Shown here piece after piece: positions 1,450 to 60,053 of a stretch of 64,000 bases of DNA (positions are counted from its first letter, which is position 1; the number at the start of each line of letters is the position of its first letter). Where the stretch lies: the IMG/VR virus record IMGVR_UViG_3300027985_000843, positions 1-64,000 of that record; one strand, written 5' to 3'. The notes under the pieces were generated by a model, which was not told the DNA's origin, searched no databases, and was given only the letters and a program-made list of their open reading frames with translations. A program made the translations under genes and the position numbers.

Positions 1450-2349
1450 ATGGCAACGTTCGAAGACAGGGCACGGCTCCTGGACAGTATCGACATACAG
1501 TACATCCAGGCGTCTAAGTGGAAAGACAAGCGACGTCAGGACCTGGAGCTGTTCGAATCGGTCGAGCTGCCCCTGGACCCCGACCACTGGTGTAGCCTGT
1601 GCATGAGCGAGGGAGCCTCCTACGTCGGAGGCTGCTGCGGGACCATGTCCCACGTCCAGGACCTGCTCGAACATGTCTTCCGCATGGGTAACGGATACAT
1701 CCGGATGAATCAGTTCGCCAATCTCGTCGAAGCCATCCTCGATCACGGCGACTTCGAAGGGAAGATCCGGTTCGACAAGTTGGATCGGTCCATCGAAGAC
1801 ATCGCGGCAGAAGCCAAGGACTGTAGCGTGTGGGAGAGCTACAGCCCCTGGGATCTCATCGCCCTCACCTGGCACCTGACCAAGGACTTCTACTCCCCCA
1901 AGACGCCTACTCCGTACAACCAAGACTTCTCCGAGGTCGAGAAGGCCATCCACACCCTGCATCACGGGGCGTCGACCCTGAGCTGGGCCCTTCTGTGTCA
2001 AAAAACCAGTACCCCCGACGGCGAGTTCGATCTGGCGAGCCAGAGCCGGGGCAACCGTTCCGTGCTGCTGTACCGGCTCATCCCCGCCCTCAGGACGCTG
2101 TTCAATCGAATCGACGAGCTTGACGCTGGCCCCTTCGATGGCGTGGCACTCGTGGACACAGAGATCGACCGCAACGCCATCGCCCACAACAACCTCGGGC
2201 TGTGCATCTTCGGTTCGGAAGAAGACGCTCGCAAGCTCGTTGCCTTGTTGGACGAGGACGAAGCCAAGAAGATCGAACTGCGCCCCGTACAGGTCTCGAA
2301 AGAAAACGGCGTCGTTTTCAAAGATTCTTCCGAACCTGCCAAGCTCTAG
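1450..2349 (+). CDS. Hypothetical protein
   Basis: Long ORF; ATG 1450 follows the tRNA with an AAAGGG SD-like element. Confidence 0.7.
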   Translation: MATFEDRARLLDSIDIQYIQASKWKDKRRQDLELFESVELPLDPDHWCSLCMSEGASYVGGCCGTMSHVQDLLEHVFRMGNGYIRMNQFANLVEAILDHGDFEGKIRFDKLDRSIEDIAAEAKDCSVWESYSPWDLIALTWHLTKDFYSPKTPTPYNQDFSEVEKAIHTLHHGASTLSWALLCQKTSTPDGEFDLASQSRGNRSVLLYRLIPALRTLFNRIDELDAGPFDGVALVDTEIDRNAIAHNNLGLCIFGSEEDARKLVALLDEDEAKKIELRPVQVSKENGVVFKDSSEPAKL

Positions 2350-2364
2350 CCCCGTAGTAGGGGC
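2330..2364 (+). promoter_or_regulatory. Class I (putative early) promoter
   Basis: CCGAAC-N17-CGTAGTA-N5-ATG(2365); only copy with a 17-nt spacer. Confidence 0.8.
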
Positions 2365-2877
2365 ATGACTACCTCAAACACCGAAATCAAGGTTGGCGAC
2401 TACGTCCGAAGCTTCGACTTTGCGAATCCTCGCGATGCTGAAGAAAACCGCGACCTGACCGGCCCGAACGCCTCCTACGTCGAGGGTACCGTCGTCGAAA
2501 TCGGCAAGGGCGACCCCGACGAGAACCCTGCGGGCTACACCTGCTACAAGATTCTCGTCCAAAAGTGGGTCTTGCATGGTAAGCCCATGAAGACCGGCGG
2601 CCACGTGTACCCGCCCGTCAACGGAACCCCCTCTTGGCTCGGTGGCTTCACTAATGGTGTCGAGAAGATCACCGTCACTCCGGTCACCGTCGAGCTGGGC
2701 GCCTACAATGGCAGCCCTTCCATCATCGCCAAAATGGAAGAAACCCTCAAATACATCGAGGATGGAGCCAAGTCGTGGGCCGGGACCCAAGAGGAATACG
2801 AAAAGTGGGCCCTGGACATCGCCAGCGGCATGCTCGTCTCAATCTCCACCAAGCTCGTGACGAAGGCAGCAAAATGA
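2365..2877 (+). CDS. Hypothetical early protein
   Basis: ORF directly after class I motif; N-terminal SH3-like IKVGDYV pattern. Confidence 0.75.
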   Translation: MTTSNTEIKVGDYVRSFDFANPRDAEENRDLTGPNASYVEGTVVEIGKGDPDENPAGYTCYKILVQKWVLHGKPMKTGGHVYPPVNGTPSWLGGFTNGVEKITVTPVTVELGAYNGSPSIIAKMEETLKYIEDGAKSWAGTQEEYEKWALDIASGMLVSISTKLVTKAAK

Positions 2878-3044
2878 GCAGCAATCAGCAAGCTCTGAGG
2901 TCCTTTGACGCCTACTGCGACTCCCTTCCGTCCAAGAAGAGAGCCGCCGTCCGACAAGCCTACGAGAAGGCTCGGGAGACGCACAACATCGCGGAGTCCA
3001 TCCGCATTGCCCTCAACTCCCCAGAAGCACAGACCAAACGATGA
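2874..3044 (+). CDS. Small hypothetical protein
   Basis: ATGA overlaps at both ends. Confidence 0.55.
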   Translation: MSSNQQALRSFDAYCDSLPSKKRAAVRQAYEKARETHNIAESIRIALNSPEAQTKR

Positions 3045-3262
3045 CCCAAGAAGAGCTGGAACAAGCCGCCAAGGAATTCTTGGCGGACAAGGACGGCTAT
3101 TCCCTGTGGTGTATAGCCACTGGGGGCCTTAGTTTCACGACGTACGAAGACGAGCTGGAGGCCAAGTACGGTGAGAGTGAACTTCAAGCCGTAAAGAACG
3201 CGATCTATCGAGAGGTGGATCGCATGAAGAATTCTCCGAACTCTTCTGAGCCGGGAGCGTAG
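3041..3262 (+). CDS. Small hypothetical protein
   Basis: ATGA overlap with upstream ORF. Confidence 0.6.
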   Translation: MTQEELEQAAKEFLADKDGYSLWCIATGGLSFTTYEDELEAKYGESELQAVKNAIYREVDRMKNSPNSSEPGA

Positions 3263-3269
3263 TAGGGAC
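3236..3269 (+). promoter_or_regulatory. Class I promoter
   Basis: CCGAAC-N16-CGTAGTA-GGGAC-ATG(3270). Confidence 0.85.
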
Positions 3270-3629
3270 ATGGCTACCCTCCTCGTCACTGACAAAAGCG
3301 GACTGGTTATCGGGCGCGTGTCGGCGAAAGCCGGAATGGTCACCCGCCACTGCGGAACCGTCACCCGATCGACGGCCATGGCCGTGTGGACTGACAAGCC
3401 GTCCTCACGCCTTCATGGCATGCATCGGCCCATCGCGTGTACCGTGAACTACACCAAGGAAATCGCGAACGATTCCACATTCGTTCCGTGCGGCTTCCTC
3501 AGTCAGAGGTCGGCGGACGAGCTTCGCGGGCAGCTCGCCAAGGGGCTGAGTGTTCGCGAAATCGCACGCAATTACGCGACCTACGTCGATACCGTCAAGC
3601 TGGTGCTCAACAGCTACCCCGCCAACTGA
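3270..3629 (+). CDS. Hypothetical protein, possible C-terminal HTH
   Basis: KGLSVREIARNYATYVDTVK resembles an HTH. Confidence 0.65.
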   Translation: MATLLVTDKSGLVIGRVSAKAGMVTRHCGTVTRSTAMAVWTDKPSSRLHGMHRPIACTVNYTKEIANDSTFVPCGFLSQRSADELRGQLAKGLSVREIARNYATYVDTVKLVLNSYPAN

Positions 3630-3682
3630 ATGAAGGGGGTGCGATCGTTCTCAGGGCCGACTCAACCAAGACACCGAAAATT

Positions 3683-3716
3683 CCGAACCTCTTCCGAGAT
3701 GGAGCGTAGTAGGGAC
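3683..3716 (+). promoter_or_regulatory. Class I promoter
   Basis: CCGAAC-N16-CGTAGTA-GGGAC-ATG(3717). Confidence 0.85.
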
Positions 3717-4259
3717 ATGAGCATCGAATTCACCTCTGACTGCCCCACCACCGAAACCACGAAGCCTGAGCCCTGCCTCTGTGCCCAGATGGCGGAACGG
3801 TGGATCGATGCCATGGATGGCGACTGGTCCGAGGCCGTCAAGGTCAACCTCAAGGCGGAAGCCAACCCCGCGTGCCCCTTCTGCAAGGGCACGGGTATTG
3901 AGGGATTCACCCGCGACGACCGCCCCCACATCAACTGGGCGAACGACAACGGTGTCCGCGTCCTCGCGACCCTGGGCATTGTTGGCGAAGATGCCCCCTA
4001 CGGCGAGATGACCATTGCGGAGGCCAGAAGGGCCGTCATGCGGGCCCGCTCTCGCTCCGACCTCTCTGCCTACACCCGGGAGGAAGAAGTTCGCCACGGG
4101 GCCCCCAGGGCCGACGAGAACGGTGTAGTAGAGCTGAAGCCCCTTCGGGTCTACAGCCCCTCCCTGGACGAGAACTCTATCCAGGATCGTATCGAGCAGT
4201 TCGCTCACTTCGTCGAGGAGTCTGCCGCCCGAGGAGCCACCCTCGTTCGTTGGGGTTAA
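3717..4259 (+). CDS. Hypothetical protein with CxxCxGxG zinc motif
   Basis: CPFCKGTG; start reassigned from class I motif. Confidence 0.7.
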   Translation: MSIEFTSDCPTTETTKPEPCLCAQMAERWIDAMDGDWSEAVKVNLKAEANPACPFCKGTGIEGFTRDDRPHINWANDNGVRVLATLGIVGEDAPYGEMTIAEARRAVMRARSRSDLSAYTREEEVRHGAPRADENGVVELKPLRVYSPSLDENSIQDRIEQFAHFVEESAARGATLVRWG

Positions 4260-4262
4260 GCC

Positions 4263-4484
4263 ATGAACAAGACACATCGAGCCGGAGTTCGGTACTCAGA
4301 CGGAAAGCAATGGTTCGCTCGCGGCAACTATCGGTCCTTCCTGACTGCGGAAGCTGCCGCAACCCGGTTGGCAAGGCCCACAGGGTCCCTGCCTCTCGTG
4401 AAGACCCCAGAGGGCAGCATCTTCTCTATCTGGGGCCCCGATCTGCCTTCGTACTGTTTCGGGTTGAAAGTTCCGAACCCTTGA
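4263..4484 (+). CDS. Small hypothetical protein
   Basis: ORF 3 nt after the upstream TAA, in frame with it. Confidence 0.55.
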   Translation: MNKTHRAGVRYSDGKQWFARGNYRSFLTAEAAATRLARPTGSLPLVKTPEGSIFSIWGPDLPSYCFGLKVPNP

Positions 4485-4506
4485 CGGCCGGGAGCGTAGT
4501 AGAAGC
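4473..4506 (+). promoter_or_regulatory. Class I promoter
   Basis: CCGAAC-N16-CGTAGTA-GAAGC-ATG(4507). Confidence 0.85.
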
Positions 4507-4788
4507 ATGAACACCAACAGCGAACTGCGGGCCATTGTCGAGAACCTCTGCACCAATCTCTCTACCAACAAGGTCCCCTGCAAGACCAACCACGTCGTTC
4601 TGAGCTTCGGCTGTGCCAATGGTGAATGGGCCTGGGGTATCGTGGTTGCAGCCGTCGGGAGCGTCGCCTCCAAGCATAAGGGCTACCGCCCTCGCCTCTG
4701 CGGAGAGGGTGAGACTCCTTCGGCAGCCATCGACGACATGCTGTCCGCACCGGCCTACGGTCGATGGCGTAAGGACCTCGCAAAATAA
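4507..4788 (+). CDS. Hypothetical early protein
   Basis: ORF directly after class I motif. Confidence 0.65.
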   Translation: MNTNSELRAIVENLCTNLSTNKVPCKTNHVVLSFGCANGEWAWGIVVAAVGSVASKHKGYRPRLCGEGETPSAAIDDMLSAPAYGRWRKDLAK

Positions 4789-4790
4789 TT

Positions 4791-4824
4791 CCGAACCCTT
4801 GACCTCCGGGAGCGTAGTAGAGAC
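4791..4824 (+). promoter_or_regulatory. Class I promoter
   Basis: CCGAAC-N16-CGTAGTA-GAGAC-ATG(4825). Confidence 0.85.
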
Positions 4825-4959
4825 ATGACGACCTCAACCAACCCCACCTACACCGCTGCCCAACGCCGCTTCTGGGCCCCCAAGGGACAGCGGAACTACT
4901 ACCAGCATGCTGTCGCCCGTTACCGCCGTCCTTCCGATGCGGCTGTCCTTCTTTCGTAA
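4825..4959 (+). CDS. 44-aa early microprotein (absent from ORF track)
   Basis: MTTSTNPTYTAAQRRFWAPKGQRNYYQHAVARYRRPSDAAVLLS*, ATG at exact class I spacing. Confidence 0.6.
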   Translation: MTTSTNPTYTAAQRRFWAPKGQRNYYQHAVARYRRPSDAAVLLS

Positions 4960-5257: not shown

Positions 5258-5448
5258 ACTACTACGTCGCGTGCCGAGACGACCGCCGACCTGACGGCAC
5301 CAAAGGCCGTTATGTTATGTCCTCTCGCACATTCACTCAACTTCGAGACGCTGTTGAGTACAAGAAAAGCATTTCTCCCTCGCGGGAGCCCATGATCCTC
5401 GTCGAGGTCAAAGTGTCCGACGAGAATGTTCAGGAGTTCGTCGGATGA
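5254..5448 (+). CDS. Small hypothetical protein
   Basis: GTGA/ATGA overlaps with neighbours. Confidence 0.5.
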   Translation: MNYYVACRDDRRPDGTKGRYVMSSRTFTQLRDAVEYKKSISPSREPMILVEVKVSDENVQEFVG

Positions 5449-5990
5449 CCACCCTCAAGCCTCCGTACCGATTCCGAGACATTCCATGCTTCACGCCCTT
5501 CACGGGCTATTCGGTGGACGTCTCGTGGCAGCATTTGGAGTCTCACATCAAGGCTGAGACGGAAGGGGCCAACGTCGACTTCAACCCCGACTTCCAGCGG
5601 GGCCATGTGTGGCCGATGAGCAAGCGGATCGCCTATGTCGAGTTCGTTCTGCGAGGTGGCAACTCAGCCAACAACCTGTACTTCAATTGCGGATCGTATC
5701 AGTTGGTGAGCGGGCCGCCCCGGGAGTACGTCCTTGTGGACGGCAAACAACGGCTGACCAGCGTCCGGATGTTCCTCAACGATGAGGTACCCATCTTCGG
5801 TGGCCTCGTCCGCAGTGACTTCGTGGACAGGCCCGACTTCCTCAAGGCCCGGTTCCGGTGGAACGTCAACAGTCTCCAGACGCGGGCAGAGATCCTCCAA
5901 TGGTACCTCGATCTCAACACCGGTGGTGTAGTCCATACGGACGCAGAGATCGAGCGGGTCCGCAAGCTGCTGGAAGCGGAGAAGGCGTGA
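5445..5990 (+). CDS. DUF262 (GmrSD N-terminal, ParB/Srx-like) domain protein
   Basis: NPDFQRGHVW and VLVDGKQRLTSV motifs, LNTGG. Confidence 0.85.
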   Translation: MTTLKPPYRFRDIPCFTPFTGYSVDVSWQHLESHIKAETEGANVDFNPDFQRGHVWPMSKRIAYVEFVLRGGNSANNLYFNCGSYQLVSGPPREYVLVDGKQRLTSVRMFLNDEVPIFGGLVRSDFVDRPDFLKARFRWNVNSLQTRAEILQWYLDLNTGGVVHTDAEIERVRKLLEAEKA

Positions 5991-6042
5991 TGACCCCAAA
6001 GGTGGCCCACAACCTATTGAATGGTGGGACTACGAGGCAGCC

Positions 6043-6351
6043 ATGAGCACACCACACCACCCAACCTTCGTTGTGTTTGACGACCGCGAGCCCGATGGGC
6101 TCGGGCGCCGCGCCTTCACCCTCTTCTGGCTCTCGGACGGGATCTTCCGTCCGGAGCTGCATAAGGACGGCAAGCCCGTCGGGTACCGCCGAGCCCAGTG
6201 CTTCTGTACACAGCCTGATCGGTTCCTCAAGGATGGGGCCGAGGTCGTGACAGAACCAGAGGCCGAGTCGCAAATGGCTGAGCTACACGAGGAGCTGATT
6301 CATGCTCGTGACGCATACCGAGCCGCACGAGGAGATGATTCATGCCCGTGA
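6043..6351 (+). CDS. Hypothetical protein
   Basis: ORF with GAGG SD, in operon. Confidence 0.55.
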   Translation: MSTPHHPTFVVFDDREPDGLGRRAFTLFWLSDGIFRPELHKDGKPVGYRRAQCFCTQPDRFLKDGAEVVTEPEAESQMAELHEELIHARDAYRAARGDDSCP

Positions 6352-10855: not shown

Positions 10856-10903
10856 GACAAGAGAAAAAGCCGAACTCTGCCGGCCGGCGACCGTAGTAGA
10901 GGC
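10856..10903. promoter_or_regulatory. Divergent class III (-) and class I (+) promoters
   Basis: Minus: TTCTCTTGTC-N13-ATG(10842). Plus: CCGAAC(10870)-N16-CGTAGTA-GAGGC-ATG(10904). Confidence 0.8.
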
Positions 10904-11155
10904 ATGAGAACACGACTCGGAACCAAGCCTTTTCAGGCAGCAGCCGTGCTGTTGCTGAACCTTCGCGTATCTCGGAACACGTGTAACCCCTTTGTCAAGG
11001 CAGGCTTCACCTTGCTCGAAAAACGTGGCCTGGTTGAACTACGAAAAGGGGTGTACCGCCCAGCAGGGAACTTCTTTGATGTGTGCGAAGAAGTGGGGTT
11101 GACTTCCGACGGGTACGCCACTGATGAGGCCAAAAACGAGGCCAAGAAGAGCTAA
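10904..11155 (+). CDS. Hypothetical early protein
   Basis: Start reassigned from class I motif. Confidence 0.65.
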   Translation: MRTRLGTKPFQAAAVLLLNLRVSRNTCNPFVKAGFTLLEKRGLVELRKGVYRPAGNFFDVCEEVGLTSDGYATDEAKNEAKKS

Positions 11156-11157
11156 AA

Positions 11158-13015: not shown

Positions 13016-13049
13016 CCGAACCCGTTCGCTCGGGGAGCGTAGTACAGGC
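13016..13049 (+). promoter_or_regulatory. Class I promoter
   Basis: CCGAAC-N16-CGTAGTA-CAGGC-ATG(13050). Confidence 0.85.
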
Positions 13050-13322
13050 ATGAGTATGGACGATTGGCTCGAAGAGCAGATCATGGATCGCTTCCCTGAC
13101 GACGTGCCGGACATCGGGGCTGGCCGCCTGAGGGTGCGTATCTTCAAGCTTTGCCACGACCTTCTGGCAAAGGCCCTCCCGAGCAAGCTGCCCAACCGCA
13201 GTGCCCGTTCCCGTCGTTGTGCCATAGCCTTGCGGCGTTCCCTTGCGATCCTTGCCATCTCTGGAAGGGACTCGGGCAGGGCGCGGATGAACTCAGGCGT
13301 CACCACGGTCATTCGACCTTGA
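13050..13322 (+). CDS. Hypothetical early protein
   Basis: ORF directly after class I motif. Confidence 0.55.
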   Translation: MSMDDWLEEQIMDRFPDDVPDIGAGRLRVRIFKLCHDLLAKALPSKLPNRSARSRRCAIALRRSLAILAISGRDSGRARMNSGVTTVIRP

Positions 13323-19050: not shown

Positions 19051-19479
19051 ATGACGCAACACGTACAAGCGAGGCTCATCGATGATGCCCGGCGTGCTTT
19101 TCTTAATTCTCCTGCTCGTGGTGGACGACATCTACAACAACCAACGACACAAGTGAGCAACATGACCATCGAATGTGTCTTCAGCGGGCACAGCCTTCGA
19201 GAAGGCTTGTGCGACGGCAAGGCGACATCGTTCTTTCGCAGTGCCAAGGGGACCGTTTGGGCGCTGTGTACCTCCTGCGCTGATCAACACAAGCGGGTGA
19301 GCATCGGTCTGGCGAAGCAAGGCCGGTTGGCGATCAAGCCCCTCGCGGGAGCCACCTTCGACATACCCTTGGACGACCCCGAGACCCTCGCCATCTGGGA
19401 GAGTCAGGGACCGGAGACCGTCCAGGGTATCATCCAAGCTGTGGACTACGTGACCAAGCGGTCGGTGACCAAAGGCTAG
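19051..19479 (+). CDS. Hypothetical protein
   Basis: ORF after class II motif. Confidence 0.65.
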   Translation: MTQHVQARLIDDARRAFLNSPARGGRHLQQPTTQVSNMTIECVFSGHSLREGLCDGKATSFFRSAKGTVWALCTSCADQHKRVSIGLAKQGRLAIKPLAGATFDIPLDDPETLAIWESQGPETVQGIIQAVDYVTKRSVTKG

Positions 19480-19790
19480 CGGTCAGCCGCTGCCGCCGCG
19501 ACCAACAGCATCGCCTTGTTCTCGGCGATCTCTCGATCTACCTTCTCAATCTCGTCCCGAAGTGCCCGACCCGTCTTGCCGATGGCAGCCAGCTCGTTGC
19601 CGGCCACTCCCCGGGCCCGCCCCCGAAGCGCCTTGTTGGCTTCCTTCTTCAGGGCGTACGCCTTGCGAAGCGCGTCTAGCTCGACCTTGGCCTGCTCCAG
19701 GACCTTGGCACTCACAGTAGTGCCCCAGCAATGAGGGCACAGCACCATCTTGATTCTGCCGGCCTCACAATGTCCGCAAGTGTTCCGCAT
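19476..19790 (-). CDS. Zinc-finger coiled-coil early protein
   Basis: CGHC...CPHCWG; class I motif upstream. Confidence 0.7.
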   Translation of the reverse strand: MRNTCGHCEAGRIKMVLCPHCWGTTVSAKVLEQAKVELDALRKAYALKKEANKALRGRARGVAGNELAAIGKTGRALRDEIEKVDREIAENKAMLLVAAAAADR

Positions 19791-19837
19791 GTCCCTACTA
19801 CGATCGTTCTGGACGATAGTTCGGAAAAATCGGTGTA
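19791..19837. promoter_or_regulatory. Divergent class I (-) and class II (+) promoters
   Basis: Minus: CCGAAC(19824)-N16-CGTAGTA-GGGAC-ATG(19790). Plus: CGGTGTA(19831)-N10-ATG(19848). Confidence 0.85.
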
Positions 19838-21832: not shown

Positions 21833-22489
21833 ATGGATTCCGTTGGACGCGTCATCCGCATTTTTCTGGCTACGAGAACTCACTACAAGGTGGACTTTCG
21901 CAAGCTCAGGGAAATGAACAGCCCCGCCTTCCGCCAAGAGCAGATGCGGATGGAGGGGGGCTACAACAAGTGGCGCGTTGAACTCGTCCCCATCCGAGAC
22001 ATCCGGGTGCCCAAGGTCTGGAACCCCGGCCGGTTCGACCAAGCCAAGAAGCTCATCGACAAGGGCACGCCCCTCGACCCCATCCGAGCCACGAAGGTCG
22101 GGGGTAAGTGGGAGATCGATGACGGCATCCACCGAACCAACGTGAGCATCGCCAAAGGATACACGCACGTTCCGGTTTTGGTGCCCGAGTGGGTCGCAAC
22201 CCCCGAAGCATACGAAGCTCCCGAACCAGAAAAGAAGCAACTTACCAAGGGCACATGGATCAAGCTGCGCGAGCCCTTCGACGGCCGGTCCGTCGGATGG
22301 GTGGACGAACAGCTTGGAAGCAACCAACCACGAGGCGTCCGCCGATGGCGCTATGGGCTCGCCCTCATCGGCCCCGGCGAAGACTGGCCCGACACAGGGG
22401 ACTTCTCTGATGATGAGCTGGACGTCAGATCCCCGCCTCCGTGGGCCATCGAAGCTCGTCTAAAGGCCGAAGCGGCGGGCTGGGCTTAG
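21833..22489 (+). CDS. ParB/Srx-like domain protein with N-terminal RVIRIFL motif
   Basis: LDPI...WEIDDGIHR...GYTHVPV. Confidence 0.75.
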   Translation: MDSVGRVIRIFLATRTHYKVDFRKLREMNSPAFRQEQMRMEGGYNKWRVELVPIRDIRVPKVWNPGRFDQAKKLIDKGTPLDPIRATKVGGKWEIDDGIHRTNVSIAKGYTHVPVLVPEWVATPEAYEAPEPEKKQLTKGTWIKLREPFDGRSVGWVDEQLGSNQPRGVRRWRYGLALIGPGEDWPDTGDFSDDELDVRSPPPWAIEARLKAEAAGWA

Positions 22490-22647
22490 TTCCAGCAGGG
22501 CTTCGAAGGCTTGGTTGCGTTCAGATCGAACAGAGGGAGCAGACGCCCCAGCTCCTGCAACCGGTCCACCACCATCTCGGTGTTCTCGACGATCTGAAGG
22601 GTCGGGAGGTCTTCGATGCTGGGGGGCGGGTTGCTCTTGGTGCTCAT
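22486..22647 (-). CDS. 53-aa early microprotein (absent from ORF track)
   Basis: MSTKSNPPPSIEDLPTLQIV...CWN*, ATG at exact class I spacing. Confidence 0.6.
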   Translation of the reverse strand: MSTKSNPPPSIEDLPTLQIVENTEMVVDRLQELGRLLPLFDLNATKPSKPCWN

Positions 22648-22681
22648 GGCTCTACTACGTCAGGAACTAGGAGGAGTTCGG
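22648..22681 (-). promoter_or_regulatory. Class I promoter
   Basis: CCGAAC-N16-CGTAGTA-GAGCC-ATG(22647). Confidence 0.85.
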
Positions 22682-40929: not shown

Positions 40930-43506
40930 TCAGACGGAGACGGGGACGTCTGCCTTGGCTTTCTCGATGTCGCGGTGCTTGAGTGCGAGCCCTCGTGCGG
41001 CTCGCACGACGTATTGCAGTGTGGCTGCGTACTTCTTGTGCACCTGCTGTTTCAACGTCTTGCTGGCTTCCGCGTCGTCGATGTATTCCTCTTCGATTTG
41101 CCCGCGAGCCATATCACAGGCGGCACAGAAAGTGATCTCTTGGTCGAAGATCTTCTGGAACACTTCGTGCAAGCCCTTGTTCCGCATCTCGTTCAAGGTG
41201 TCAGCAAACGCCTTGATGTCGCTGTTGTAGCGGACCCAGAACTTATTGCGAGTCCGGTCTGTCACGAGAAAGTAACCCTCGCTCTCGGTATCCTGGCCCC
41301 AATCCATCATCGACCAGTTCTCGTCGTTCAAACGGACAGCCTCCGGAGCGTCAGGCCGCATACCCGACAAGACCGTGGTGACGGTGGTCTCAACCGTGCG
41401 CCCACCATTGATCTTCTTTCCCTTCGGGCATGGAGTCCGTTCTCGCTGGGCCTCCACTTCCACCGTCAACGTGGCCGTGCTGATGATATCGCCATCATCC
41501 GAGTAGAGAGTCAAGAAGACCTCTCGGTACTCCCCCACCACCGCATCCTCGGGACACAGAATCCGACACTTCACCCGCTGATTCTGCATCTCTTCCCGGC
41601 TCTTCACAACGAGCCCGTTCGTGGAGACCACGATCTTGCTCTTCGGACGCATACCGCTGATGTCCCAGTATCGAGGAGTGGCGTCCGTTTCGAAGAACCA
41701 CGTGTACGACTGTCCCGGATACAGACGGACCCTGGCATTAAAGGGGTCCTTCGTCATCTCGTTGTGGATGGCCCACCTGATGAAGGTGGGCACGTCCGAA
41801 GCCTTGATCTTGTCCAGCTTCTCGGGGCCCCTCGGAATCATTCGGTGCGTGGCCACCTCGACCAGGTTGTCCGAGAGGATGCCCGCCTTCATCAGCTGGT
41901 CAGTCATCTCTTTCTCGAAACCCTTGTCCTCCTTGGTTCGAGGCGGTCGGTTGTACTCGCTATCCCACTTTGCGAGGATAGTGTCCTGCTTGAGGCAGTG
42001 TACGATCGCATTGAAGATCTCCTTCTGCACAGGAGTCGCCTTCATCCGATCTCGGGTCGACGTGAACAGCTCGTGACGCGCCATCGGATGCAGGTCATCA
42101 CAGATAACCTGCACCATCATCCACCCACCAACAGCGTAGAGACCCGCGCCTTCAGTCTGGTTGGTCAGCCAGGCCCTGGGCCCTTCGGCGTGGTTCTGCC
42201 CATCCAGGTTGAAGTGGATGGGGAGTTCCTGGTGCATGTAATTCTTCACGGCATCCTTCACGGCAGCCCGTTCAGTATCCTTGAGTTCGTTCTTTCGATC
42301 CCTCTGATCTCGTCCGATGACCCAGACCTTGATCTTGATGGTCCCCATCTTGTCAACCATGTCGTCCGGGTTGGGACCGAACCTGTGCGGGTCCAGCGTG
42401 TACTCATAGCCGTGCGAATACACGACGGTGATGCCTTCGTCGGGAGCCAACCGACTCCGGTCGAGCTGCACGAAGGCCCCCTTGACGGTGTGCGGTGTCG
42501 GATGATACGCGGCGTACTTCTTATCGGAATTCTTCTTGCCGCCGGACTGGAAACAAGCCTCCGTCCGGAAAGGCATCACGCATTCCCCGAGCATACGGTT
42601 GCCGAGAGCATAGGTGCTCTTCCGGCCGTTCCACTCCTTCGCATAGGAGTTGTCGTAGCCGATATGCCGGATGAACGTTCCGTGGGTGAAGCCCTTCGGC
42701 GCCTTCATGCGAGGGATCTTGCCATCGACCGTCATGTACAAGAAGACAGGAAGGGTCTTCGTGCTCCCGTCGGGGTTTTTCTCCCAGACCTTCTTCACGA
42801 CAGTGAACCCCACCTCATCAGAGTCGACGTGCCGAGTGGCAATGACCGTGAGTTTACTGTAGTTGAAGGTGGCAGAAGCCCCGTACCCGTGTTTACCGAT
42901 GAGATAGGGCTTCTGGGCCTTATTCCCCTTATGCAAAGAGAGAATGGTCTTAGCCATGTTGTCCGGGAGAATTCCGATTCCGTGGTCGCGGATGTCGTAG
43001 ATGCCAACATCCCATGACCGGACCAACAGATTCTTCGACACTTCCAGAAGGTGGTCATCGCAAGCCTTGTCCCGCATGGCTTCCGGAGTGACCCCGAAGT
43101 ATCGTTTGACGGCCTCAGCAGGAGACGCCGGGACAGGGTCACCCGACTTGTCCTGGTACACCTTCAGCTCGATATTGGCATCCATGCCATTCGTAAACCT
43201 CTCGGCCAGTGCTCGCCCGGCGCAAGCGTTTGAGGCAACGGCTGACTCGTTGTTGGGGTTGTCGTCGAGAGGAACCCACTTGACATTGGGATGGTGGTTG
43301 ATGAAGTAGTCCAGTCGATTGGACCCGACCTCCCATGCCGCCGCGAGTTCCTTTTCGGTGGGCTTTTTAGGCGGGGTGGTCCACTGCGGGAAAGGGTGGA
43401 TAGCGTCCACCACTGTCTTCCCCCTCGTGTTCTTCTTGGTGATCACGTGAGGGGTGGCGATGGCAGCAAACAGATCTTCGATAGTGGTGGGGTGAGTTAC
43501 GCTCAT
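40930..43506 (-). CDS. GHKL (HATPase-fold) ATPase, 858 aa
   Basis: ERFTNGMDA (ExxxNxxDA), IRDHGIGI (DxGxG), GKHGYGASA, GTFI. Confidence 0.85.
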   Translation of the reverse strand: MSVTHPTTIEDLFAAIATPHVITKKNTRGKTVVDAIHPFPQWTTPPKKPTEKELAAAWEVGSNRLDYFINHHPNVKWVPLDDNPNNESAVASNACAGRALAERFTNGMDANIELKVYQDKSGDPVPASPAEAVKRYFGVTPEAMRDKACDDHLLEVSKNLLVRSWDVGIYDIRDHGIGILPDNMAKTILSLHKGNKAQKPYLIGKHGYGASATFNYSKLTVIATRHVDSDEVGFTVVKKVWEKNPDGSTKTLPVFLYMTVDGKIPRMKAPKGFTHGTFIRHIGYDNSYAKEWNGRKSTYALGNRMLGECVMPFRTEACFQSGGKKNSDKKYAAYHPTPHTVKGAFVQLDRSRLAPDEGITVVYSHGYEYTLDPHRFGPNPDDMVDKMGTIKIKVWVIGRDQRDRKNELKDTERAAVKDAVKNYMHQELPIHFNLDGQNHAEGPRAWLTNQTEGAGLYAVGGWMMVQVICDDLHPMARHELFTSTRDRMKATPVQKEIFNAIVHCLKQDTILAKWDSEYNRPPRTKEDKGFEKEMTDQLMKAGILSDNLVEVATHRMIPRGPEKLDKIKASDVPTFIRWAIHNEMTKDPFNARVRLYPGQSYTWFFETDATPRYWDISGMRPKSKIVVSTNGLVVKSREEMQNQRVKCRILCPEDAVVGEYREVFLTLYSDDGDIISTATLTVEVEAQRERTPCPKGKKINGGRTVETTVTTVLSGMRPDAPEAVRLNDENWSMMDWGQDTESEGYFLVTDRTRNKFWVRYNSDIKAFADTLNEMRNKGLHEVFQKIFDQEITFCAACDMARGQIEEEYIDDAEASKTLKQQVHKKYAATLQYVVRAARGLALKHRDIEKAKADVPVSV

Positions 43507-43544
43507 GGTATGTGCCTCTCTGGGCGTGCCAGCCCAGTAAAGGG

Positions 43545-43596
43545 GCCGCCGGACAGGCGGCCATCCTCAGTTACTGCCGCCGGACAGGCGGCCATC
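43545..43596. repeat. Two identical 21-bp direct repeats, each a hairpin
   Basis: GCCGCCGGACAGGCGGCCATC at 43545-43565 and 43576-43596; stem GCCGCC/GGCGGC. Confidence 0.9.
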
Positions 43597-43602
43597 TCTC
43601 TA

Positions 43603-43639
43603 TACACCGGTACTACGTCCGTCCGGTCAACAAGTTCGG
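43603..43639 (-). promoter_or_regulatory. Tandem class I plus class II promoters
   Basis: CCGAAC-N16-CGTAGTA-c-CGGTGTA on minus strand, upstream of the GHKL gene. Confidence 0.8.
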
Positions 43640-51083: not shown

Positions 51084-51427
51084 AACGTCGAGCTTTTCTT
51101 CAGGTGCTTGCTGTCACAGCAGTGCCGCTGGTGGGGTCTTTCCAAGGCGACACTGAGGACGCCTACATTCAGCTCTACGACGGCGACAAGGCGGTGACCA
51201 AGCCGCTACCCACCAAGTTCAGGTGGAACAGCAAGATGACGGTCACGGTCCAACCCTCACAACCTATCCGAGTGACCCGTGCTGTCCTGTACTCCCCCAA
51301 GGTGGGCCGAAGGAATCACGACATCGACCCCCTCATCATCAAGCCTTCGACTGAATTAACGGTGACTTGGGAGATCGGCGCGGTTTCCTCAAAAGATTTT
51401 CCGAACTCCTCCCGACGGCGAGCGTAG
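51080..51427 (+). CDS. Putative Tat-exported protein
   Basis: GTG start after AGGAG: MKRRAFLQVLAVTAVPLVG, a twin-arginine RRxFL signal. Confidence 0.6.
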   Translation: MKRRAFLQVLAVTAVPLVGSFQGDTEDAYIQLYDGDKAVTKPLPTKFRWNSKMTVTVQPSQPIRVTRAVLYSPKVGRRNHDIDPLIIKPSTELTVTWEIGAVSSKDFPNSSRRRA

Positions 51428-51434
51428 TAGGGAC
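51401..51434 (+). promoter_or_regulatory. Class I promoter
   Basis: CCGAAC-N16-CGTAGTA-GGGAC-ATG(51435). Confidence 0.85.
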
Positions 51435-51812
51435 ATGGCGTGGATTGATACACTCAAGGTTGGGGACAAGGTGATCGTTGACCATGGCGGGTGGCCTAGC
51501 ACTTCACACCTGCGCACGGTTACGCGTCTGACGAAGACGCAGATCATCTTGAACAACGACGCGAAGTACAACCGAAAAACCGGTCATAAGGTCGGGACGG
51601 GGATCTACTACTCCTCATCCCTCCGGGAAGCCACGCCGGAAGCCCTCAAGGAAATGCAGCAGCTCAGGGCTCTCACGAAGGCCAAGCGAGAGCTTTGGGA
51701 CTTCGCGGAGAAGATCAACAGGATGTCAGTGCATGAGATCCATCGAGACGAGGCCCTGTCGAGCAAGCTGCAACAGATCACCGACAGCATCAGGGAAGGA
51801 TCGGAATCATGA
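51435..51812 (+). CDS. Hypothetical early protein
   Basis: LKVGDKV...VTRLTKTQI. Confidence 0.7.
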   Translation: MAWIDTLKVGDKVIVDHGGWPSTSHLRTVTRLTKTQIILNNDAKYNRKTGHKVGTGIYYSSSLREATPEALKEMQQLRALTKAKRELWDFAEKINRMSVHEIHRDEALSSKLQQITDSIREGSES

Positions 51813-55188: not shown

Positions 55189-55195
55189 GGACATT

Positions 55196-56208: not shown

Positions 56209-56384
56209 GAGGGTTCCTCTCCGACCACGAACCATAAACAGAAAGTTGGCCGTCTCGTCTCAGGAGCCTATCGTGGCGGCATGATGATCCAAATCACACT
56301 GCCCGCCGACGCCACCGCGCTCGAAGTCATGTACCTCAAAAATTCCCTGCCGCTTGGTTGGCGACTCCGGTGTATCCCTGAGGT

Positions 56385-57869: not shown

Positions 57870-57903
57870 CCAAGCCCTTCTCGCCACGATCTAGGAGACA
57901 CAC

Positions 57904-59031
57904 ATGGTTGCTTTCGAGCTATCCCAGAGTTTCGAGATGCCGGACGTCCTGCAAGCCGGGCGCCCCGACACCCGGCCCATCAGACGGGCGATCGACTTGT
58001 TCCGCCACCACTCCTCCAAGGATGAGTGGGACAAGCTATGCCAGTACACCGTCGAGGCCCTTTCCCGGAGCACGTCCCAAAAGGACGACCGCAAAATCAT
58101 GAGCATCCAAGCGATGCTCCTCGGAGACTGGGACAACATCAAGTCCACCGAAGGGAACAAGCGGATACAGGAGGGACGGTACAAGGTCTGGGTCGTCTGG
58201 GTGCAGACCGTCGCCCCGCACTGGTACAAGAACCTGCTCCGGTGCCACCTGGAGATGTGGAGCCTCCAGGTGCCCGAAGGGCCGGACCAAAACAACATCC
58301 GCAAGCTGTATCAGACGTTCGCCGTCGACTGCGGGTCCCTGCTGTGGGGATGGGACAACCACAACAACGCGGAGAGTCGGATCGCCGAACTCCAAAACCT
58401 CATCCTCCAAATCGAAACCCCTCAGCAGAGCTGGATAATGGAAGAACGCCACGTCTTCCAGTACAACTACGAAGTTTCCTTCATTTCTCGCTTGACAGAG
58501 GTTCCCCCCACCCCTGTCAACTCCACCAATACCCCCTACGCCGCTGAGCCGCCCTCTCGGCGAGAAGCTCGCAACGCCATCGAAGAAGCTGCCTACGACT
58601 ACGTCCTGAACCTGTTCCCCAACATCGACAACGCCGACGTGACAGCGTGGCCGATCGAACCCTGTTGGGTCTTGCTCCGGGCAGACGGGCAGATCCAGCG
58701 GCTTCTCATGGTGTTTCGCTACAACCAGGCATTCTCGCGAATCCCTAGGGTCGTGACGGCCTTCGGGGGCATGAACGTCATGGGACTCGTCAACGAGGAG
58801 GAATGCGATTCTAGCCACCCTCTGTTCGCCGGAGAGCTGCAATTCGCTGGCACCCGCCGAGTCGTGCTATTCAACCTCAAGGGAGCGAATACCACACTCG
58901 TTCGTACGTGGGTGAGTCGGTCGGTCCCCGCGAAAGAAGACATCGTCAAAGAGTTCTACCTTGCCAATGGCGATGGTATGCGTAAGGTCCGGCCCGACGT
59001 GTACGCGAAGGCGAAGAGTCTCAAGAAATGA
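57904..59031 (+). CDS. Hypothetical protein
   Basis: 375-aa ORF with AGGAG SD. Confidence 0.75.
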   Translation: MVAFELSQSFEMPDVLQAGRPDTRPIRRAIDLFRHHSSKDEWDKLCQYTVEALSRSTSQKDDRKIMSIQAMLLGDWDNIKSTEGNKRIQEGRYKVWVVWVQTVAPHWYKNLLRCHLEMWSLQVPEGPDQNNIRKLYQTFAVDCGSLLWGWDNHNNAESRIAELQNLILQIETPQQSWIMEERHVFQYNYEVSFISRLTEVPPTPVNSTNTPYAAEPPSRREARNAIEEAAYDYVLNLFPNIDNADVTAWPIEPCWVLLRADGQIQRLLMVFRYNQAFSRIPRVVTAFGGMNVMGLVNEEECDSSHPLFAGELQFAGTRRVVLFNLKGANTTLVRTWVSRSVPAKEDIVKEFYLANGDGMRKVRPDVYAKAKSLKK

Positions 59032-60011
59032 CCACAGCCCGTCCCTTTCTCAAGTGGGCCGGCGGCAAGCACCAGCTCTTGCCGCAACTCCTGAATATCT
59101 TCCCCAGACAATGCGGGACCTACTACGAGCCCTTTGTCGGGGGAGGGTCAGTGTTCTTCGAGGTAGCGTCCCGCAAGAGAATCAATTTCGGCCGGGCTGT
59201 CCTCAATGATGCCAACCAGGAGCTGATCGACTGCTATCAGGCGGTCAGAAGCTTCCCTCGCGATCTGATCCTCCAGCTCAAGAGGTGGGAAGTCAACAAG
59301 GAAACGTTCCATCGCGTCAGATCCATGCAACCTGAAGACCTGAGCCCAGCTCGCCGGGCCGCTCGCATGATCTATCTCAACAAGGTGTGCTTCAACGGGC
59401 TGTACCGCGTCAACAAGCAGGGGCAGTTCAACTCCCCCTTCGGTAGGTGGCCCCGGCCGCCCCGGCCCCTTGATGCCCCCAACCTACTGAGCTGCTCCGC
59501 TGTCCTCAATCGATACGCGGCCTTGTACAACCAGGACTTCGCACAGGCCGTGCTGGACGCCCAAGAGGACGACCTCGTCTACTTCGACCCGCCGTACGTC
59601 CCCCTCAACCCAACCTCGAACTTCACCAGCTACACCAAGGACGGGTTCTATCAGCAGGACCAGGAGCGCCTCGCGCTGCTCTTCCGGCAACTCGTGGCCC
59701 GAGGGGTGAAGGTGATACTCTCGAACTCCGATACGCCTCTAGTTCGAGAGCTGTACCACGGGTTCGAGATGCACGAGGTTCTGGTTCGGAGAAGCATCAA
59801 CTCCAAAGGGACGCAACGGGGAGGAGTTCCCGAGCTTATCGTTGTGGGCCGGCCCGAACTGTTGGTCGACCCCTACCCCGAATGGCTCGGCGGCCGCCCG
59901 CCCTCGCACGAACAAGTCGACTACGCCGCCTACATGGCCTCCCTCGAAGAGGCGGGCGAGCTGCGGGACGGCGACGAGTTCACCCTGAGCGACTTGGACG
60001 CACTTTTCTGA
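59028..60011 (+). CDS. dam: DNA adenine methyltransferase (Dam/D12 class)
   Basis: PFLKWAGGK, YYEPFVGGGSV, FNGLYRVN..G.FN.PFG, YFDPPY. Confidence 0.93.
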   Translation: MTTARPFLKWAGGKHQLLPQLLNIFPRQCGTYYEPFVGGGSVFFEVASRKRINFGRAVLNDANQELIDCYQAVRSFPRDLILQLKRWEVNKETFHRVRSMQPEDLSPARRAARMIYLNKVCFNGLYRVNKQGQFNSPFGRWPRPPRPLDAPNLLSCSAVLNRYAALYNQDFAQAVLDAQEDDLVYFDPPYVPLNPTSNFTSYTKDGFYQQDQERLALLFRQLVARGVKVILSNSDTPLVRELYHGFEMHEVLVRRSINSKGTQRGGVPELIVVGRPELLVDPYPEWLGGRPPSHEQVDYAAYMASLEEAGELRDGDEFTLSDLDALF

Positions 60012-60019
60012 GAGAATCC

Positions 60020-60053
60020 CCGAACTTCTTCCGTCGGCGGTCGTAGTACGACC
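60020..60053 (+). promoter_or_regulatory. Class I promoter
   Basis: CCGAAC-N16-CGTAGTA-CGACC-ATG(60054). Confidence 0.85.

What the first reader, a model, noticed from the sequence alone, without database searches (positions are those of the whole stretch)
2330..60053. Class I bipartite promoter CCGAAC-N16-CGTAGTA-N5-ATG, 12 near-invariant copies
Seen at 2330, 3236, 3683, 4473, 4791, 10870, 13016, 51401 and 60020 (+) and at 19824, 22681 and 43639 (-). The spacer is 16 nt in 11 of 12 copies. The ATG is exactly 5 nt downstream in 11 of 12, leaving no room for a spaced SD. An A/T-rich tract usually lies just upstream. Established: a -35 'AAC' and -10 'CGT(A)' with about 16-nt spacing is the architecture of ECF sigma promoters. 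Inference: early genes (mostly small hypotheticals, five promoters within 2.3-4.9 kb) are transcribed as leaderless mRNAs by an ECF-type sigma, either a hijacked host one or a phage-carried one, not by the housekeeping sigma.
Basis: partly seen in the sequence, partly recalled or inferred. Interest (0 to 1): 0.8.

Follow-up and report, generated by a model that had tools for sequence, protein, structure and literature searches.

The report
Phage sigma promoters driving leaderless genes
An uncultivated giant phage from a hydrothermal-vent metagenome carries about 55 near-identical copies of a two-part ECF-sigma-type promoter placed so that most transcripts should begin at the start codon, and the phage itself encodes two unusual sigma-like proteins, behind a copy of this promoter, that are the likeliest readers.

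Summary
CCGAAC-N16/17-CGTAGTA occurs 12 times in the window (0 expected). Eleven copies have ATG exactly 5 nt downstream. The window is the first 64 kb of a 372-kb IMG/VR phage contig. The whole contig holds 51 exact copies and 4 one-mismatch copies, all but one in its two small-gene arms. Two-mismatch matches are at noise level.

Forty-two copies sit 5 nt before an ATG that opens a real coding frame. Others drive SD-led genes or G-rich non-coding RNAs, so the motif is a transcription signal.

No phage RNA polymerase was detected. The phage encodes a tandem pair of divergent ECF-like sigma proteins (303 and 286 aa). Their operon lies behind a conserved sigma-A-like promoter (P1) followed by a Class I copy (P2). 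Distant relatives keep this layout and the -10 CGTA, but each has its own -35.

Best model (0.55): host sigma-A fires P1, then a phage sigma switches on Class I and its own P2. That makes Class I delayed-early, not immediate-early.

A second leaderless class, GGTG-TAnnnT-N6/7-ATG (61 copies), looks sigma-A dependent. Start sites, timing and host remain untested because no RNA run was listed.

This is a new variant of a known strategy (phiEco32 gp36, SPO1, T4).

The parts
2330..2877 (+). Class I promoter 2330-2359 (17-nt spacer), then leaderless ORF 2365-2877 (170 aa)
   Evidence: no Pfam hit
3236..3629 (+). Class I promoter 3236-3264, then leaderless ORF 3270-3629 (119 aa)
3683..4259 (+). Class I promoter 3683-3711, then leaderless ORF 3717-4259 (180 aa)
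4473..4788 (+). Class I promoter 4473-4501, then leaderless ORF 4507-4788 (93 aa)
4791..4959 (+). Class I promoter 4791-4819, then leaderless ORF 4825-4959 (44 aa). Promoter and first codons resemble those of minus-strand genes at 368-370 kb of the contig.
10870..11155 (+). Class I promoter 10870-10898, then leaderless ORF 10904-11155 (83 aa)
13016..13322 (+). Class I promoter 13016-13044, then leaderless ORF 13050-13322 (90 aa)
19476..19824 (-). Class I promoter 19824-19796, then leaderless ORF 19790-19476 (104 aa)
22486..22681 (-). Class I promoter 22681-22653, then leaderless ORF 22647-22486 (53 aa)
40930..43639 (-). Class I promoter 43639-43611 with no ATG at +5. A GGTGTAT element abuts the -10. 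A ~100-nt leader with two copies of a GGCCGCC..GGCGGC hairpin and an SD (GAGAGG) precedes the 858-aa gene 43506-40930.
   Evidence: the gene has no Pfam hit
51401..51812 (+). Class I promoter 51401-51429, then leaderless ORF 51435-51812 (125 aa, Phage_ProQ_C_like, 28.4 bits)
60020..60617 (+). Class I promoter 60020-60048, then leaderless ORF 60054-60617 (187 aa)

Best explanation
Class I is the cognate promoter of a phage-encoded ECF-like sigma factor that works with the host RNA polymerase core.

The proposed order of events:
1. The phage carries an operon of two paralogous, very divergent sigma-like genes outside the window: sigma-303 at contig 282948-283859(-) and sigma-286 at 282040-282900(-).
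2. After infection, the host housekeeping holoenzyme fires a sigma-A-like promoter that is unique to this operon (P1, TTGAC-N17/18-TAnnAC).
3. The new phage sigma reads CCGAAC at -35 and CGTAGTA at -10. It then turns on about 55 promoters in the two small-gene arms, including a copy in front of its own operon (P2), which gives positive feedback.
4. At most copies transcription starts on the A of an ATG 5 nt after the -10 element. The mRNA therefore has no leader and no Shine-Dalgarno sequence, and would have to be translated as a leaderless mRNA.

Shown here: the motif, its near-invariance, its distribution, its coupling to real ORFs and to non-coding RNAs, the sigma-like genes, the P1-P2 layout and its conservation.

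Inferred: that the motif is a promoter, which sigma reads it, where transcription starts, and when.
For: 1. Motif statistics. There are 51 exact and about 4 one-mismatch copies, with two-mismatch matches at noise level. The spacer length is fixed while its sequence varies, and there is an A/T-rich upstream tract.
2. The architecture matches the ECF hallmarks of AAC at -35 and CGT at -10 (PMC8103513).
3. Forty-two of 55 copies have ATG at +5, with ORFs of 44-804 codons. Their GC1/2/3 of 0.59/0.47/0.76 matches the 0.60/0.44/0.76 of long genes.
4. The same motif also precedes SD-led genes and a conserved G-rich non-coding 5' sequence, in this phage and in a relative. It is therefore a transcription signal, not a translation signal.
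5. No multisubunit or T7-like RNA polymerase was detected.
6. Sigma-303 matches Pfam Sigma70_r2 at 29 bits, and 41 of 66 family members hit r2. Its AF2 model has pLDDT 88, with Z of 7-7.7 to ECF sigmas and sigma-B.
7. Sigma-286 is a paralogue (hhalign 81%, E 1.2e-5). Its top structural matches are all sigma factors, the best being M. tuberculosis ECF sigma-L over both domains.
8. A Class I copy lies upstream of the sigma operon in G000, G001 and L026, behind a conserved TTGAC-N17/18-TAnnAC.
9. Distant relatives (sigma 36-43% identical) keep the tandem layout and the -10 CGTA(G/A)T. Each has its own -35 (CTAAAC, TCAACA, GTTCA), and in two relatives (L028 and L027) that motif is repeated elsewhere in the contig.
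10. The relative G001 has 51% GC against 59% here, and its sigma is 58% identical. It has 23 exact copies, clustered next to its sigma operon.
11. The sigma family was found in none of 185,579 species genomes. The motif with its ATG occurs in metagenomes only on contigs of this phage group.
12. Precedent: phiEco32 gp36, a two-domain phage sigma that reads middle and late promoters after sigma-70-driven early transcription (PMC12276001).
Against: - There is no transcript evidence at all. Start sites, timing and sigma dependence are inferred, and no RNA run was listed.
- Sigma-303 scores below NCBIfam's cut-off for the ECF superfamily (27.5 against 42.9 bits). Its C-terminal HTH looks truncated. 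The sigma-286 model has only moderate confidence (pLDDT 69, Z 5.4).
- Which paralogue reads Class I is unknown. A third protein, gp225, has the only canonical sigma-4 region.
- The -35 differences between lineages track overall divergence and could equally reflect different host sigmas.
- A sigma gene lying behind an early, host-read promoter would look the same.
- The -10 of P1 ends in C rather than the usual T.
- The contig is about 78% complete, so missing genes could matter.
Confidence: 0.55

Rival explanations
1. Class I promoters are true early promoters read by a host ECF-type sigma (the hijacked option). The phage sigma operon is simply one of the early genes, and its products read a different class, for example the -10-only GGTG-TAnnnT class or a late class.
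For: - The ECF-type architecture fits.
- Class I genes are small, unknown and clustered, each with its own promoter, as is typical of host-takeover genes.
- The sigma operon sits behind a Class I copy.
- Class I is almost absent from the 76-253 kb structural block, whereas GGTGTAT elements do occur there.
- A -10-only class would suit a sigma with a weak sigma-4, such as sigma-303.
Against: - ECF sigmas are usually held inactive and are present in small amounts, which makes a poor basis for about 55 early promoters (my own knowledge).
- The conserved sigma-A-like P1 in front of the operon would be redundant.
- The GGTG-TAnnnT class has a degenerate TAnnnT core, typical of housekeeping sigma promoters.
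- The host is unknown, so no host ECF regulon could be examined. Both genome scans found nothing.
Confidence: 0.2
2. Recognition is split between phage proteins. A sigma-2-bearing protein (sigma-303 or sigma-286) reads CGTAGTA, while the separately encoded gp225 (contig 218306-218983, minus strand) supplies a canonical sigma-4 that reads CCGAAC. Alternatively, gp225 remodels the holoenzyme.
For: - Sigma-303 matches only positions 3-86 of the ECF superfamily profile. gp225 matches only positions 97-162, above the cut-off at 48.7 bits, and Pfam Sigma70_r4 at E 2.8e-13.
- gp225 is 81% identical in G001, more conserved than sigma-303 at 58%.
- T4 gp55 with gp33, and phiEco32 gp36 with gp79, are precedents for multi-protein promoter recognition (PMC12276001).
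Against: - Sigma-303 family members and sigma-286 have their own C-terminal HTH.
- gp225 lies in the long minus-strand block next to replication genes, so it may act later.
- No interaction evidence exists.
Confidence: 0.1
3. Class I is read by an unrecognised phage RNA polymerase, or by a virion-delivered factor, encoded in the missing ~22% of the genome or too divergent to detect. That would make these genes immediate-early and independent of host sigma.
For: - The contig is about 78% complete.
- Near-invariant promoters are typical of phage polymerases.
- The searches used only two Pfam models, and the control for PF00940 rang in no genome.
Against: - A two-box motif with a 16-17-nt spacer of free sequence and AAC/CGT cores is a sigma signature, not that of known single-subunit or phiKZ/AR9-type phage polymerases (my own knowledge).
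- Two sigma-like genes lie directly behind a copy of the motif.
Confidence: 0.07
4. The motif is not a promoter. It could be a protein operator, a packaging or recombination site, or an RNA-level element in the 5' UTR of transcripts that start further upstream.
For: - No transcript data exist.
- Many copies lie in very short gaps after the preceding ORF, so read-through transcripts would contain them.
Against: - All 42 ATG-coupled copies point into an ORF.
- The two boxes are invariant while the spacer is free in sequence and fixed in length, so no RNA helix is conserved.
- The distance from the -10 to the ATG fits a start on the A.
- The copies in front of non-coding sequences and in front of the sigma operon are unrelated to translation.
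Confidence: 0.03

Closest known systems
Autoregulated ECF (group 4) sigma factors and their promoters, e.g. B. subtilis SigW (TGAAAC-N16-CGTA), E. coli RpoE, alphaproteobacterial EcfG (GGAAC-N16/17-CGTT)
   Same: - AAC core at -35, CGT core at -10 and a 16-17-nt spacer.
- High promoter specificity.
- A copy of the promoter in front of the sigma gene.
- A sigma-2 fold closest to ECF sigmas.
   Different: - Encoded by a phage.
- The proteins are 280-300 aa, not about 180.
- Sigma-303 has a ~80-aa insertion inside sigma-2 and a truncated C-terminal HTH, and scores below the family cut-off.
- No anti-sigma was recognised. Instead a second sigma paralogue is co-transcribed.
- The -10 is a 7-nt invariant CGTAGTA.
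- Most transcripts would be leaderless.
Escherichia phage phiEco32 gp36 (with gp79)
   Same: A distant two-domain sigma homologue encoded by a phage that has no polymerase of its own. Early genes are read by host sigma-70, then gp36 holoenzyme reads a conserved phage-specific promoter (PMC12276001).
   Different: - No detectable sequence relation. tblastn of sigma-303 against 50,697 phage records finds nothing.
- The phiEco32 consensus is AATGTA at -11.5, not an AAC/CGT pair.
- Its transcripts are not described as leaderless.
- phiEco32 is a 78-kb podovirus, against a phage of more than 370 kb here.
Sigma cascades of Bacillus phage SPO1 (gp28, gp33/34) and phage T4 (gp55/gp33)
   Same: Host sigma-A reads early promoters, and phage sigma-like proteins then redirect the host core to phage-specific promoters (my own knowledge; SPO1 summary in the abstract of PMC13401047).
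   Different: - The proteins and promoter sequences are different.
- T4 late promoters have a -10 only.
- Neither is of ECF type or leaderless.
Leaderless phage transcripts (lambda cI from PRM; Thermus phage P23-45 middle and late genes; actinophages)
   Same: Transcription starts at the start codon, with the -10 element a few nucleotides upstream of ATG (my own knowledge, not checked in the library).
   Different: In those cases the promoters are housekeeping-sigma promoters. That matches the second class found here (GGTG-TAnnnT-N6/7-ATG), not the ECF-type Class I.

Membership tests
ECF-sigma-dependent promoter | -35 box with an AAC core | tested here: met
   CCGAAC is invariant in 51 copies, followed by Y-n-T-T as in GGAACTT. 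Hallmark from PMC8103513.
ECF-sigma-dependent promoter | -10 box with a CGT core | tested here: met
   CGTAGTA is invariant. Only the 5th base varies, in 4 probable copies.
ECF-sigma-dependent promoter | Spacing of about 16-17 nt between the boxes | tested here: met
   44 copies have N16, 7 have N17 and none has N15.
ECF-sigma-dependent promoter | Transcription start a few nucleotides downstream that depends on an ECF holoenzyme | not testable with these tools
   No RNA run was listed. No biochemistry was possible.
ECF (group 4) sigma factor: sigma-303 | Sigma-2 domain | tested here: met
   - Pfam Sigma70_r2 at 29.3 bits, above the cut-off of 24.
- 41 of 66 family members hit r2.
- VIA Z of 7-7.7 to ECF sigmas over residues 20-188.
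- It carries a ~80-aa insertion.
ECF (group 4) sigma factor: sigma-303 | Sigma-4 domain, and no other promoter-binding domains | tested here: inconclusive
   - The C-terminal helices 243-301 form an HTH-like unit.
- Only a few family members hit Sigma70_r4, r4_2 or HTH models.
- No confident structural match covers this part.
ECF (group 4) sigma factor: sigma-303 | Score above the curated family threshold (NCBIfam TIGR02937) | tested here: not met
   27.5 bits against a cut-off of 42.9. Relatives score 20-28 bits.
ECF (group 4) sigma factor: sigma-303 / sigma-286 operon | Co-transcribed anti-sigma factor | tested here: not met
   The conserved downstream gene is a sigma paralogue, not a recognisable anti-sigma. 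The next gene is an N6/N4 DNA methylase.
ECF (group 4) sigma factor: sigma-303 / sigma-286 operon | Positive autoregulation (own promoter type upstream of the gene) | tested here: inconclusive
   The motif, or its lineage-specific variant, lies 45-70 nt upstream of the sigma ATG in all 8 lineages that have upstream sequence. Its dependence on the sigma itself is not shown.
Leaderless mRNA | Transcript 5' end at, or within a few nucleotides of, the start codon, with no SD | tested here: inconclusive
   The geometry fits: the -10 ends 5 nt before ATG in 42 of 55 copies, and C precedes ATG in 40 of 44. Other genes of the phage do use an SD, with a GGAG peak at -10. No 5'-end data exist.

The most novel reading that the evidence does not exclude
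A clade of uncultivated giant phages runs a self-contained, self-amplifying transcription programme. It is built on a previously undescribed family of tandem, paralogous ECF-like sigma proteins (232 metagenomic members, none found in cellular genomes or cultured phages). Their -35 specificity has diversified between lineages while the -10 stayed fixed. Their regulon consists almost entirely of leaderless mRNAs plus a family of G-rich small RNAs. The programme may be linked to the phage's own CRISPR system, because one relative has a lone CRISPR repeat in front of its sigma gene.
Probability: 0.3. Interest if true: 0.75.

Novelty: new variant of a known kind. Interest (0 to 1): 0.55.

Why it matters
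- If the model holds, this is a compact and highly specific sigma-promoter set from an unexplored phage clade. It comprises a 13-base invariant two-box promoter, two new sigma-like proteins, and natural -35 variants in relatives. Such sets are the raw material for orthogonal gene switches, as ECF sigmas already are.
- It would show that a giant phage without its own polymerase can organise a large part of its programme, about 100 of some 460 genes, around leaderless mRNAs from two promoter classes. That bears on how leaderless translation is used for takeover.
- The motif gives a ready annotation rule: it fixes the start codons of about 42 otherwise unannotatable small genes.
- It remains a variant of the known logic in which a phage sigma redirects the host core polymerase. 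Nothing here has been shown experimentally.

Tried and rejected
- Cultured-phage relatives. Megablast of 12 kb of the window found nothing, and tblastn of sigma-303 found nothing. A conserved vWA protein matched only Ackermannviridae and others at 35% identity, which says nothing about the host.
- Host identification. The phage CRISPR repeat is absent from 185,579 species genomes. The sigma family is absent too (the first attempt failed because the alignment was too diverse). 'Relatives' cannot be drawn for a virus record. An Atlas look-up of the transglycosylase gave only vague phylum hints: Myxococcota and Acidobacteriota. The host is unresolved, so host genomes could not be scanned for the motif.
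- Transcript evidence. Only DNA runs hold the sequence, from a hydrothermal vent metagenome. No RNA run was listed. Read laying was not used, since contigs of DNA runs cannot show start sites.
- A third 'sigma' candidate at 268 kb turned out to be a LAGLIDADG/HTH homing-endonuclease-like protein.
- A profile search of sigma-303 against PDB sequences gave only chance hits to myoglobin.
- No Rfam family matches the RNAs behind Class I promoters.
- No terminal repeat joins the contig ends, so the physical ends and the entry order are unknown.
- Stop-codon usage is ordinary, so the suppressor-like tRNA does not indicate recoding that would upset the ORF calls.
- Single hits of the motif in other viral or metagenome contigs (L004-L006, L009-L011, L013, L058-L060) are isolated and look like chance.

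Full report
**1. The observation**

None occurred in 100 dinucleotide-preserving shuffles. CGTAGTA-N5-ATG has 11 matches against 0.01 expected. Allowing two mismatches adds only one hit, at chance level.

The window is the first 64 kb of a single 371,739-bp IMG/VR virus contig. The contig has 59.4% GC, is classed 'linear' and is about 78% complete by CheckV. The DNA comes from a hydrothermal-vent metagenome.

Across the whole contig there are 51 exact copies (44 with N16, 7 with N17) and 7 one-mismatch hits. Four of the seven look real: they read CGTAATA or CGTACTA in the right context. The number of two-mismatch hits (33) equals that in shuffled sequence, which gave 20-35. The element is therefore all-or-none, with 13 invariant bases.

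Conservation extends beyond the two boxes:
- A at -6, A/T at -5 and -4, and T at -2 and -1, upstream of CCGAAC.
- Y-n-T-T after CCGAAC.
- R two bases before CGTAGTA.
- S-R-R-n-C-ATG-A after CGTAGTA.

**2. Genome context**

My own crude gene calls give 461 genes. From about 70 to 250 kb the contig is one minus-strand block of long genes. It includes the large terminase at 210.6-212.6 kb, the portal at 207.0-208.8 kb, and a replication and repair set: RecD2, UvrD, NAD ligase, class II RNR and GroEL. Genes in this block use Shine-Dalgarno sequences, with a GGAG peak at -10.

The two arms (0-70 kb and 250-372 kb) hold small genes on both strands. Every Class I copy but one lies in the arms (0-76 kb and 253-372 kb). 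They form clusters at 2.3-4.8 kb, 308.8-314.0 kb, 323.1-329.5 kb and 362.9-371.3 kb. The phage also carries 46 tRNA genes and a tmRNA gene at 247-276 kb.

**3. What the motif is coupled to**

Of the 55 copies, 42 have ATG exactly 5 nt after CGTAGTA. Each of these opens an ORF of 44-804 codons (median 92); only 40% of random ATGs open an ORF of at least 44 codons. Their GC content at codon positions 1, 2 and 3 (0.59, 0.47, 0.76) matches that of the phage's long genes (0.60, 0.44, 0.76).

If CGT occupies -12 to -10, as in ECF promoters, the A of ATG falls at +1. The preceding base is C in 40 of 44 copies, the usual pyrimidine-purine start (the numbering is inference).

The remaining copies show that the motif is a transcription signal, not a translation signal:
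- Some precede genes with a leader and an SD: 286287(-), 320477(+), the sigma operon, and window 43639(-). The last has a ~100-nt leader containing two hairpin repeats.
- Three in this phage and six in a relative precede a conserved G-rich non-coding sequence, G(G)GTGTGGYGGGYGGG, which begins 2-5 nt after the -10.

Window ORFs driven by Class I have no Pfam match, except one Phage_ProQ_C_like domain.

**4. The transcription machinery**

No multisubunit beta subunit and no T7-like RNA polymerase was detected. The second control was uninformative.

One ORF matches Sigma70_r2. This is sigma-303, at 282948-283859(-), scoring 29 bits.
- Its family has 232 members among 1.8 billion representative proteins.
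- 41 of 66 members hit Sigma70_r2, and a few hit Sigma70_r4, r4_2, ECF or HTH models at the C-terminus.
- The AF2 model (pLDDT 88) has a sigma-2 domain with a ~80-aa insertion. Its best matches are ECF sigmas (M. tuberculosis 9m9d_F, Bartonella RpoE, SigE N-terminal domain, E. coli sigma-E, CnrH) and S. aureus sigma-B, at Z 6.0-7.7.
- It scores below NCBIfam's ECF-superfamily cut-off, 27.5 against 42.9 bits.

The gene immediately downstream is sigma-286, at 282040-282900(-). It is adjacent in every relative examined.
- It is a distant paralogue of sigma-303: hhalign gives 81% probability and E 1.2e-5, from region 2.3/2.4 through the C-terminal HTH.
- Its orthologues hit HTH_23, and faintly r2 and r4_2.
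- All the top structural matches of its moderate model (pLDDT 69) are sigma factors. The best is M. tuberculosis ECF sigma-L, over 146 of 174 residues and both domains.

A third protein, gp225 at 218306-218983(-), contains only a canonical sigma-4 region. It scores 48.7 bits on positions 97-162 of the ECF profile, above the cut-off.

A fourth candidate proved to be a LAGLIDADG-type endonuclease.

**5. The sigma operon has two promoters, and this layout is conserved**

Upstream of sigma-303 lies TTGACT-N18-TAGGAC (P1). It is the only TTGAC-N17-20-TAnnAC in the contig. About 25 nt further on lies a Class I copy (P2), followed by a ~35-nt leader with an SD.

The same P1-P2 arrangement is found in these relatives:
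- G001, a 241-kb contig with 51% GC whose sigma is 58% identical.
- The fragment L026.

More distant relatives have sigmas 36-43% identical and share the synteny DCD-DnaJ-...-sigma-sigma'-methylase. They keep P1 (7 of 9 lineages) and a P2 with -10 CGTA (8 of 8 lineages with enough upstream sequence; the ninth, L024, has only 24 nt upstream). The -35 of P2 differs by lineage:

| Locus | P2 motif | Repeated elsewhere in the contig |
|---|---|---|
| L028 | CTAAA(C/T)-N16/17-CGTA(G/A)TA | yes, 4 copies in 16 kb |
| L027 | TCAACA-N15/16-CGTAGTG | yes |
| L052 | GTTCAC with CGTAGTC | only one copy seen |
| L053 | GTTCAT with CGTACGC | only one copy seen |

G001 has 23 exact Class I copies, all in the 47 kb that end at its sigma operon. 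A second contig from the same sample carries more.

The sigma family was found in none of 185,579 species genomes and in no cultured phage.

**6. A second leaderless class**

The commonest over-represented word in the contig is CGGTGTAT. Sixty-one copies of GTGTAnnnT are followed at 6-7 nt by an ATG that opens an ORF of at least 40 codons. They have no conserved -35. In G001 the TAnnnT core is degenerate: TATGGT, TACGAT, TAGGTT, TAAAAT.

A few full TTGAC-N17-TAGGnT-N6-ATG promoters also exist, at 162234(-), 255503(+) and 268297(-).

These look like housekeeping-sigma promoters with an extended -10. They occur in both arms, in the tRNA region and in the structural block. Leaderless starts are therefore a general habit of this phage, and presumably of its host. 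They are not a mark of Class I.

**7. The most likely mechanism**

Host sigma-A holoenzyme reads P1, and probably the GGTG-TAnnnT promoters. The sigma-303/sigma-286 operon is expressed. One of its products, with host core polymerase, then reads Class I, including P2, which gives positive feedback. That makes the Class I regulon delayed-early or middle.

This matches three of the four classical ECF hallmarks: the AAC/CGT promoter, a two-domain sigma, and a promoter copy upstream of the sigma gene. It also matches the logic of phiEco32, in which sigma-70 reads early genes and then gp36 takes over.

I put this at 0.55. The rivals are:

| Rival | Confidence |
|---|---|
| A hijacked host ECF sigma, with the phage sigmas serving another class | 0.20 |
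| Split or assisted recognition involving gp225 | 0.10 |
| An undetected phage polymerase or an injected factor | 0.07 |
| Not a promoter | 0.03 |

The comparative data do not separate the first two. A host sigma that differs between hosts would also give lineage-specific -35 boxes, and the recognition-helix differences I see track overall divergence.

**8. Limits**

No RNA run could be listed. Start sites, timing and sigma dependence are therefore inferences from sequence. The host is unknown. Gene calls are my own simple ones. The contig is incomplete and has no terminal repeat.

**9. Verdict**

The feature is real, strongly non-random and conserved in a relative. 'Early' and 'hijacked host sigma' are not supported.

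It is a new variant of a known strategy, found in an unexplored clade of giant phages.

Noticed in passing
window 1590(+), 14321(-), 17359(-), 19028(-), 19036(+), 22164(-), 26190(-), 27521(-), 28648(-), 34206(+), 39402(+), 44214(-), 50606(-), 50614(+), 63030(-), 63791(+); 61 copies in the contig: A second leaderless promoter class, (C/T)(C)GGTG-TAnnnT-N6/7-ATG, with no -35 box. It is often arranged as divergent palindromic pairs (ATACACCGGTGTAT). It looks like an extended -10 housekeeping-sigma promoter, with TG abutting the hexamer rather than one base away.
   Followed up: partly
window 5994-6030 (+); contig 351.6-352.9 kb and 349136; locus L025 about 60-95 nt upstream of its sigma gene: The phage carries a CRISPR array of about 18 repeats (CTCAAAGGTGGCCCACGACCTATTGAATGGTGGGAC, ~72-nt period). 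A lone repeat lies in the window between ORF 5445-5990 and ORF 6043-6351. A distant relative has a lone repeat of the same family, with compensatory changes, directly upstream of its sigma gene. The 764-aa ORF next to the array (349108-351402) has no Pfam or PHROG hit. The repeat is absent from 185,579 species genomes.
   Followed up: partly
contig 362857(+), 364795(+), 371331(-); G001 299(+), 2835(-), 3028(+), 13910(-), 15256(-), 15788(-) (loci L017, L018): Class I promoters that are not followed by ATG drive transcripts with a shared G-rich 5' end, G(G)GTGTGGYGGGYGGGR. It has four G-tracts, so a G-quadruplex or a 5' tag is possible. The rest of each transcript is variable. One forms a perfect 17-bp hairpin, and tandem 26-nt repeats follow it. 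No Rfam match.
   Followed up: partly
window 1355-1430 (+): A tRNA with anticodon TTA (an ochre-suppressor type; Rfam tRNA at 54 bits) sits just after a GGTGTATGTT -10 element at 1338. Stop-codon usage in the contig is ordinary (TGA 282, TAG 124, TAA 55), so there is no sign of recoding.
   Followed up: partly
contig 247-276 kb (-): A block of 46 tRNA genes and a tmRNA (tag ANDNSAMPVAA). It is interspersed with small ORFs and a LAGLIDADG/HTH endonuclease-like gene (268262-267324) that is expressed from a consensus TTGACA-N17-TAGGCT leaderless promoter.
   Followed up: partly
contig 166597-166630 (3 copies), 169363, 176079, 234261 (all minus strand): cCCAGATCCA(G/A)A occurs in gaps upstream of SD-led genes in the structural block. 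It may be a late-promoter or regulatory motif. There are too few copies to judge.
   Followed up: no
contig 218306-218983 (-), locus L002:1144-1821: gp225 has a very acidic N-terminus, a canonical sigma-70 region 4 (Pfam E 2.8e-13) and a second HTH, but no sigma-2. It is 81% identical in the relative G001 and lies next to a clamp-loader-like gene. It may be a sigma-4 mimic, an appropriator, or one half of a split sigma.
   Followed up: partly
window 35823-37514 (+); window 4791-4830 compared with contig 368-370 kb (-): A 563-aa protein has a strong peptidoglycan transglycosylase domain (Pfam E 1e-45). Separately, small Class I genes at the two contig ends share promoter-plus-N-terminus similarity (MNTN...), which suggests families of paralogous small genes.
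   Followed up: no
window 43520-43600 (-): The leader of the 858-aa gene behind the Class I copy at 43639 contains two direct copies of GATGGCCGCCTGTCCGGCGGC, each a GC-rich hairpin. It may be an attenuator or a protein-binding site.
   Followed up: no
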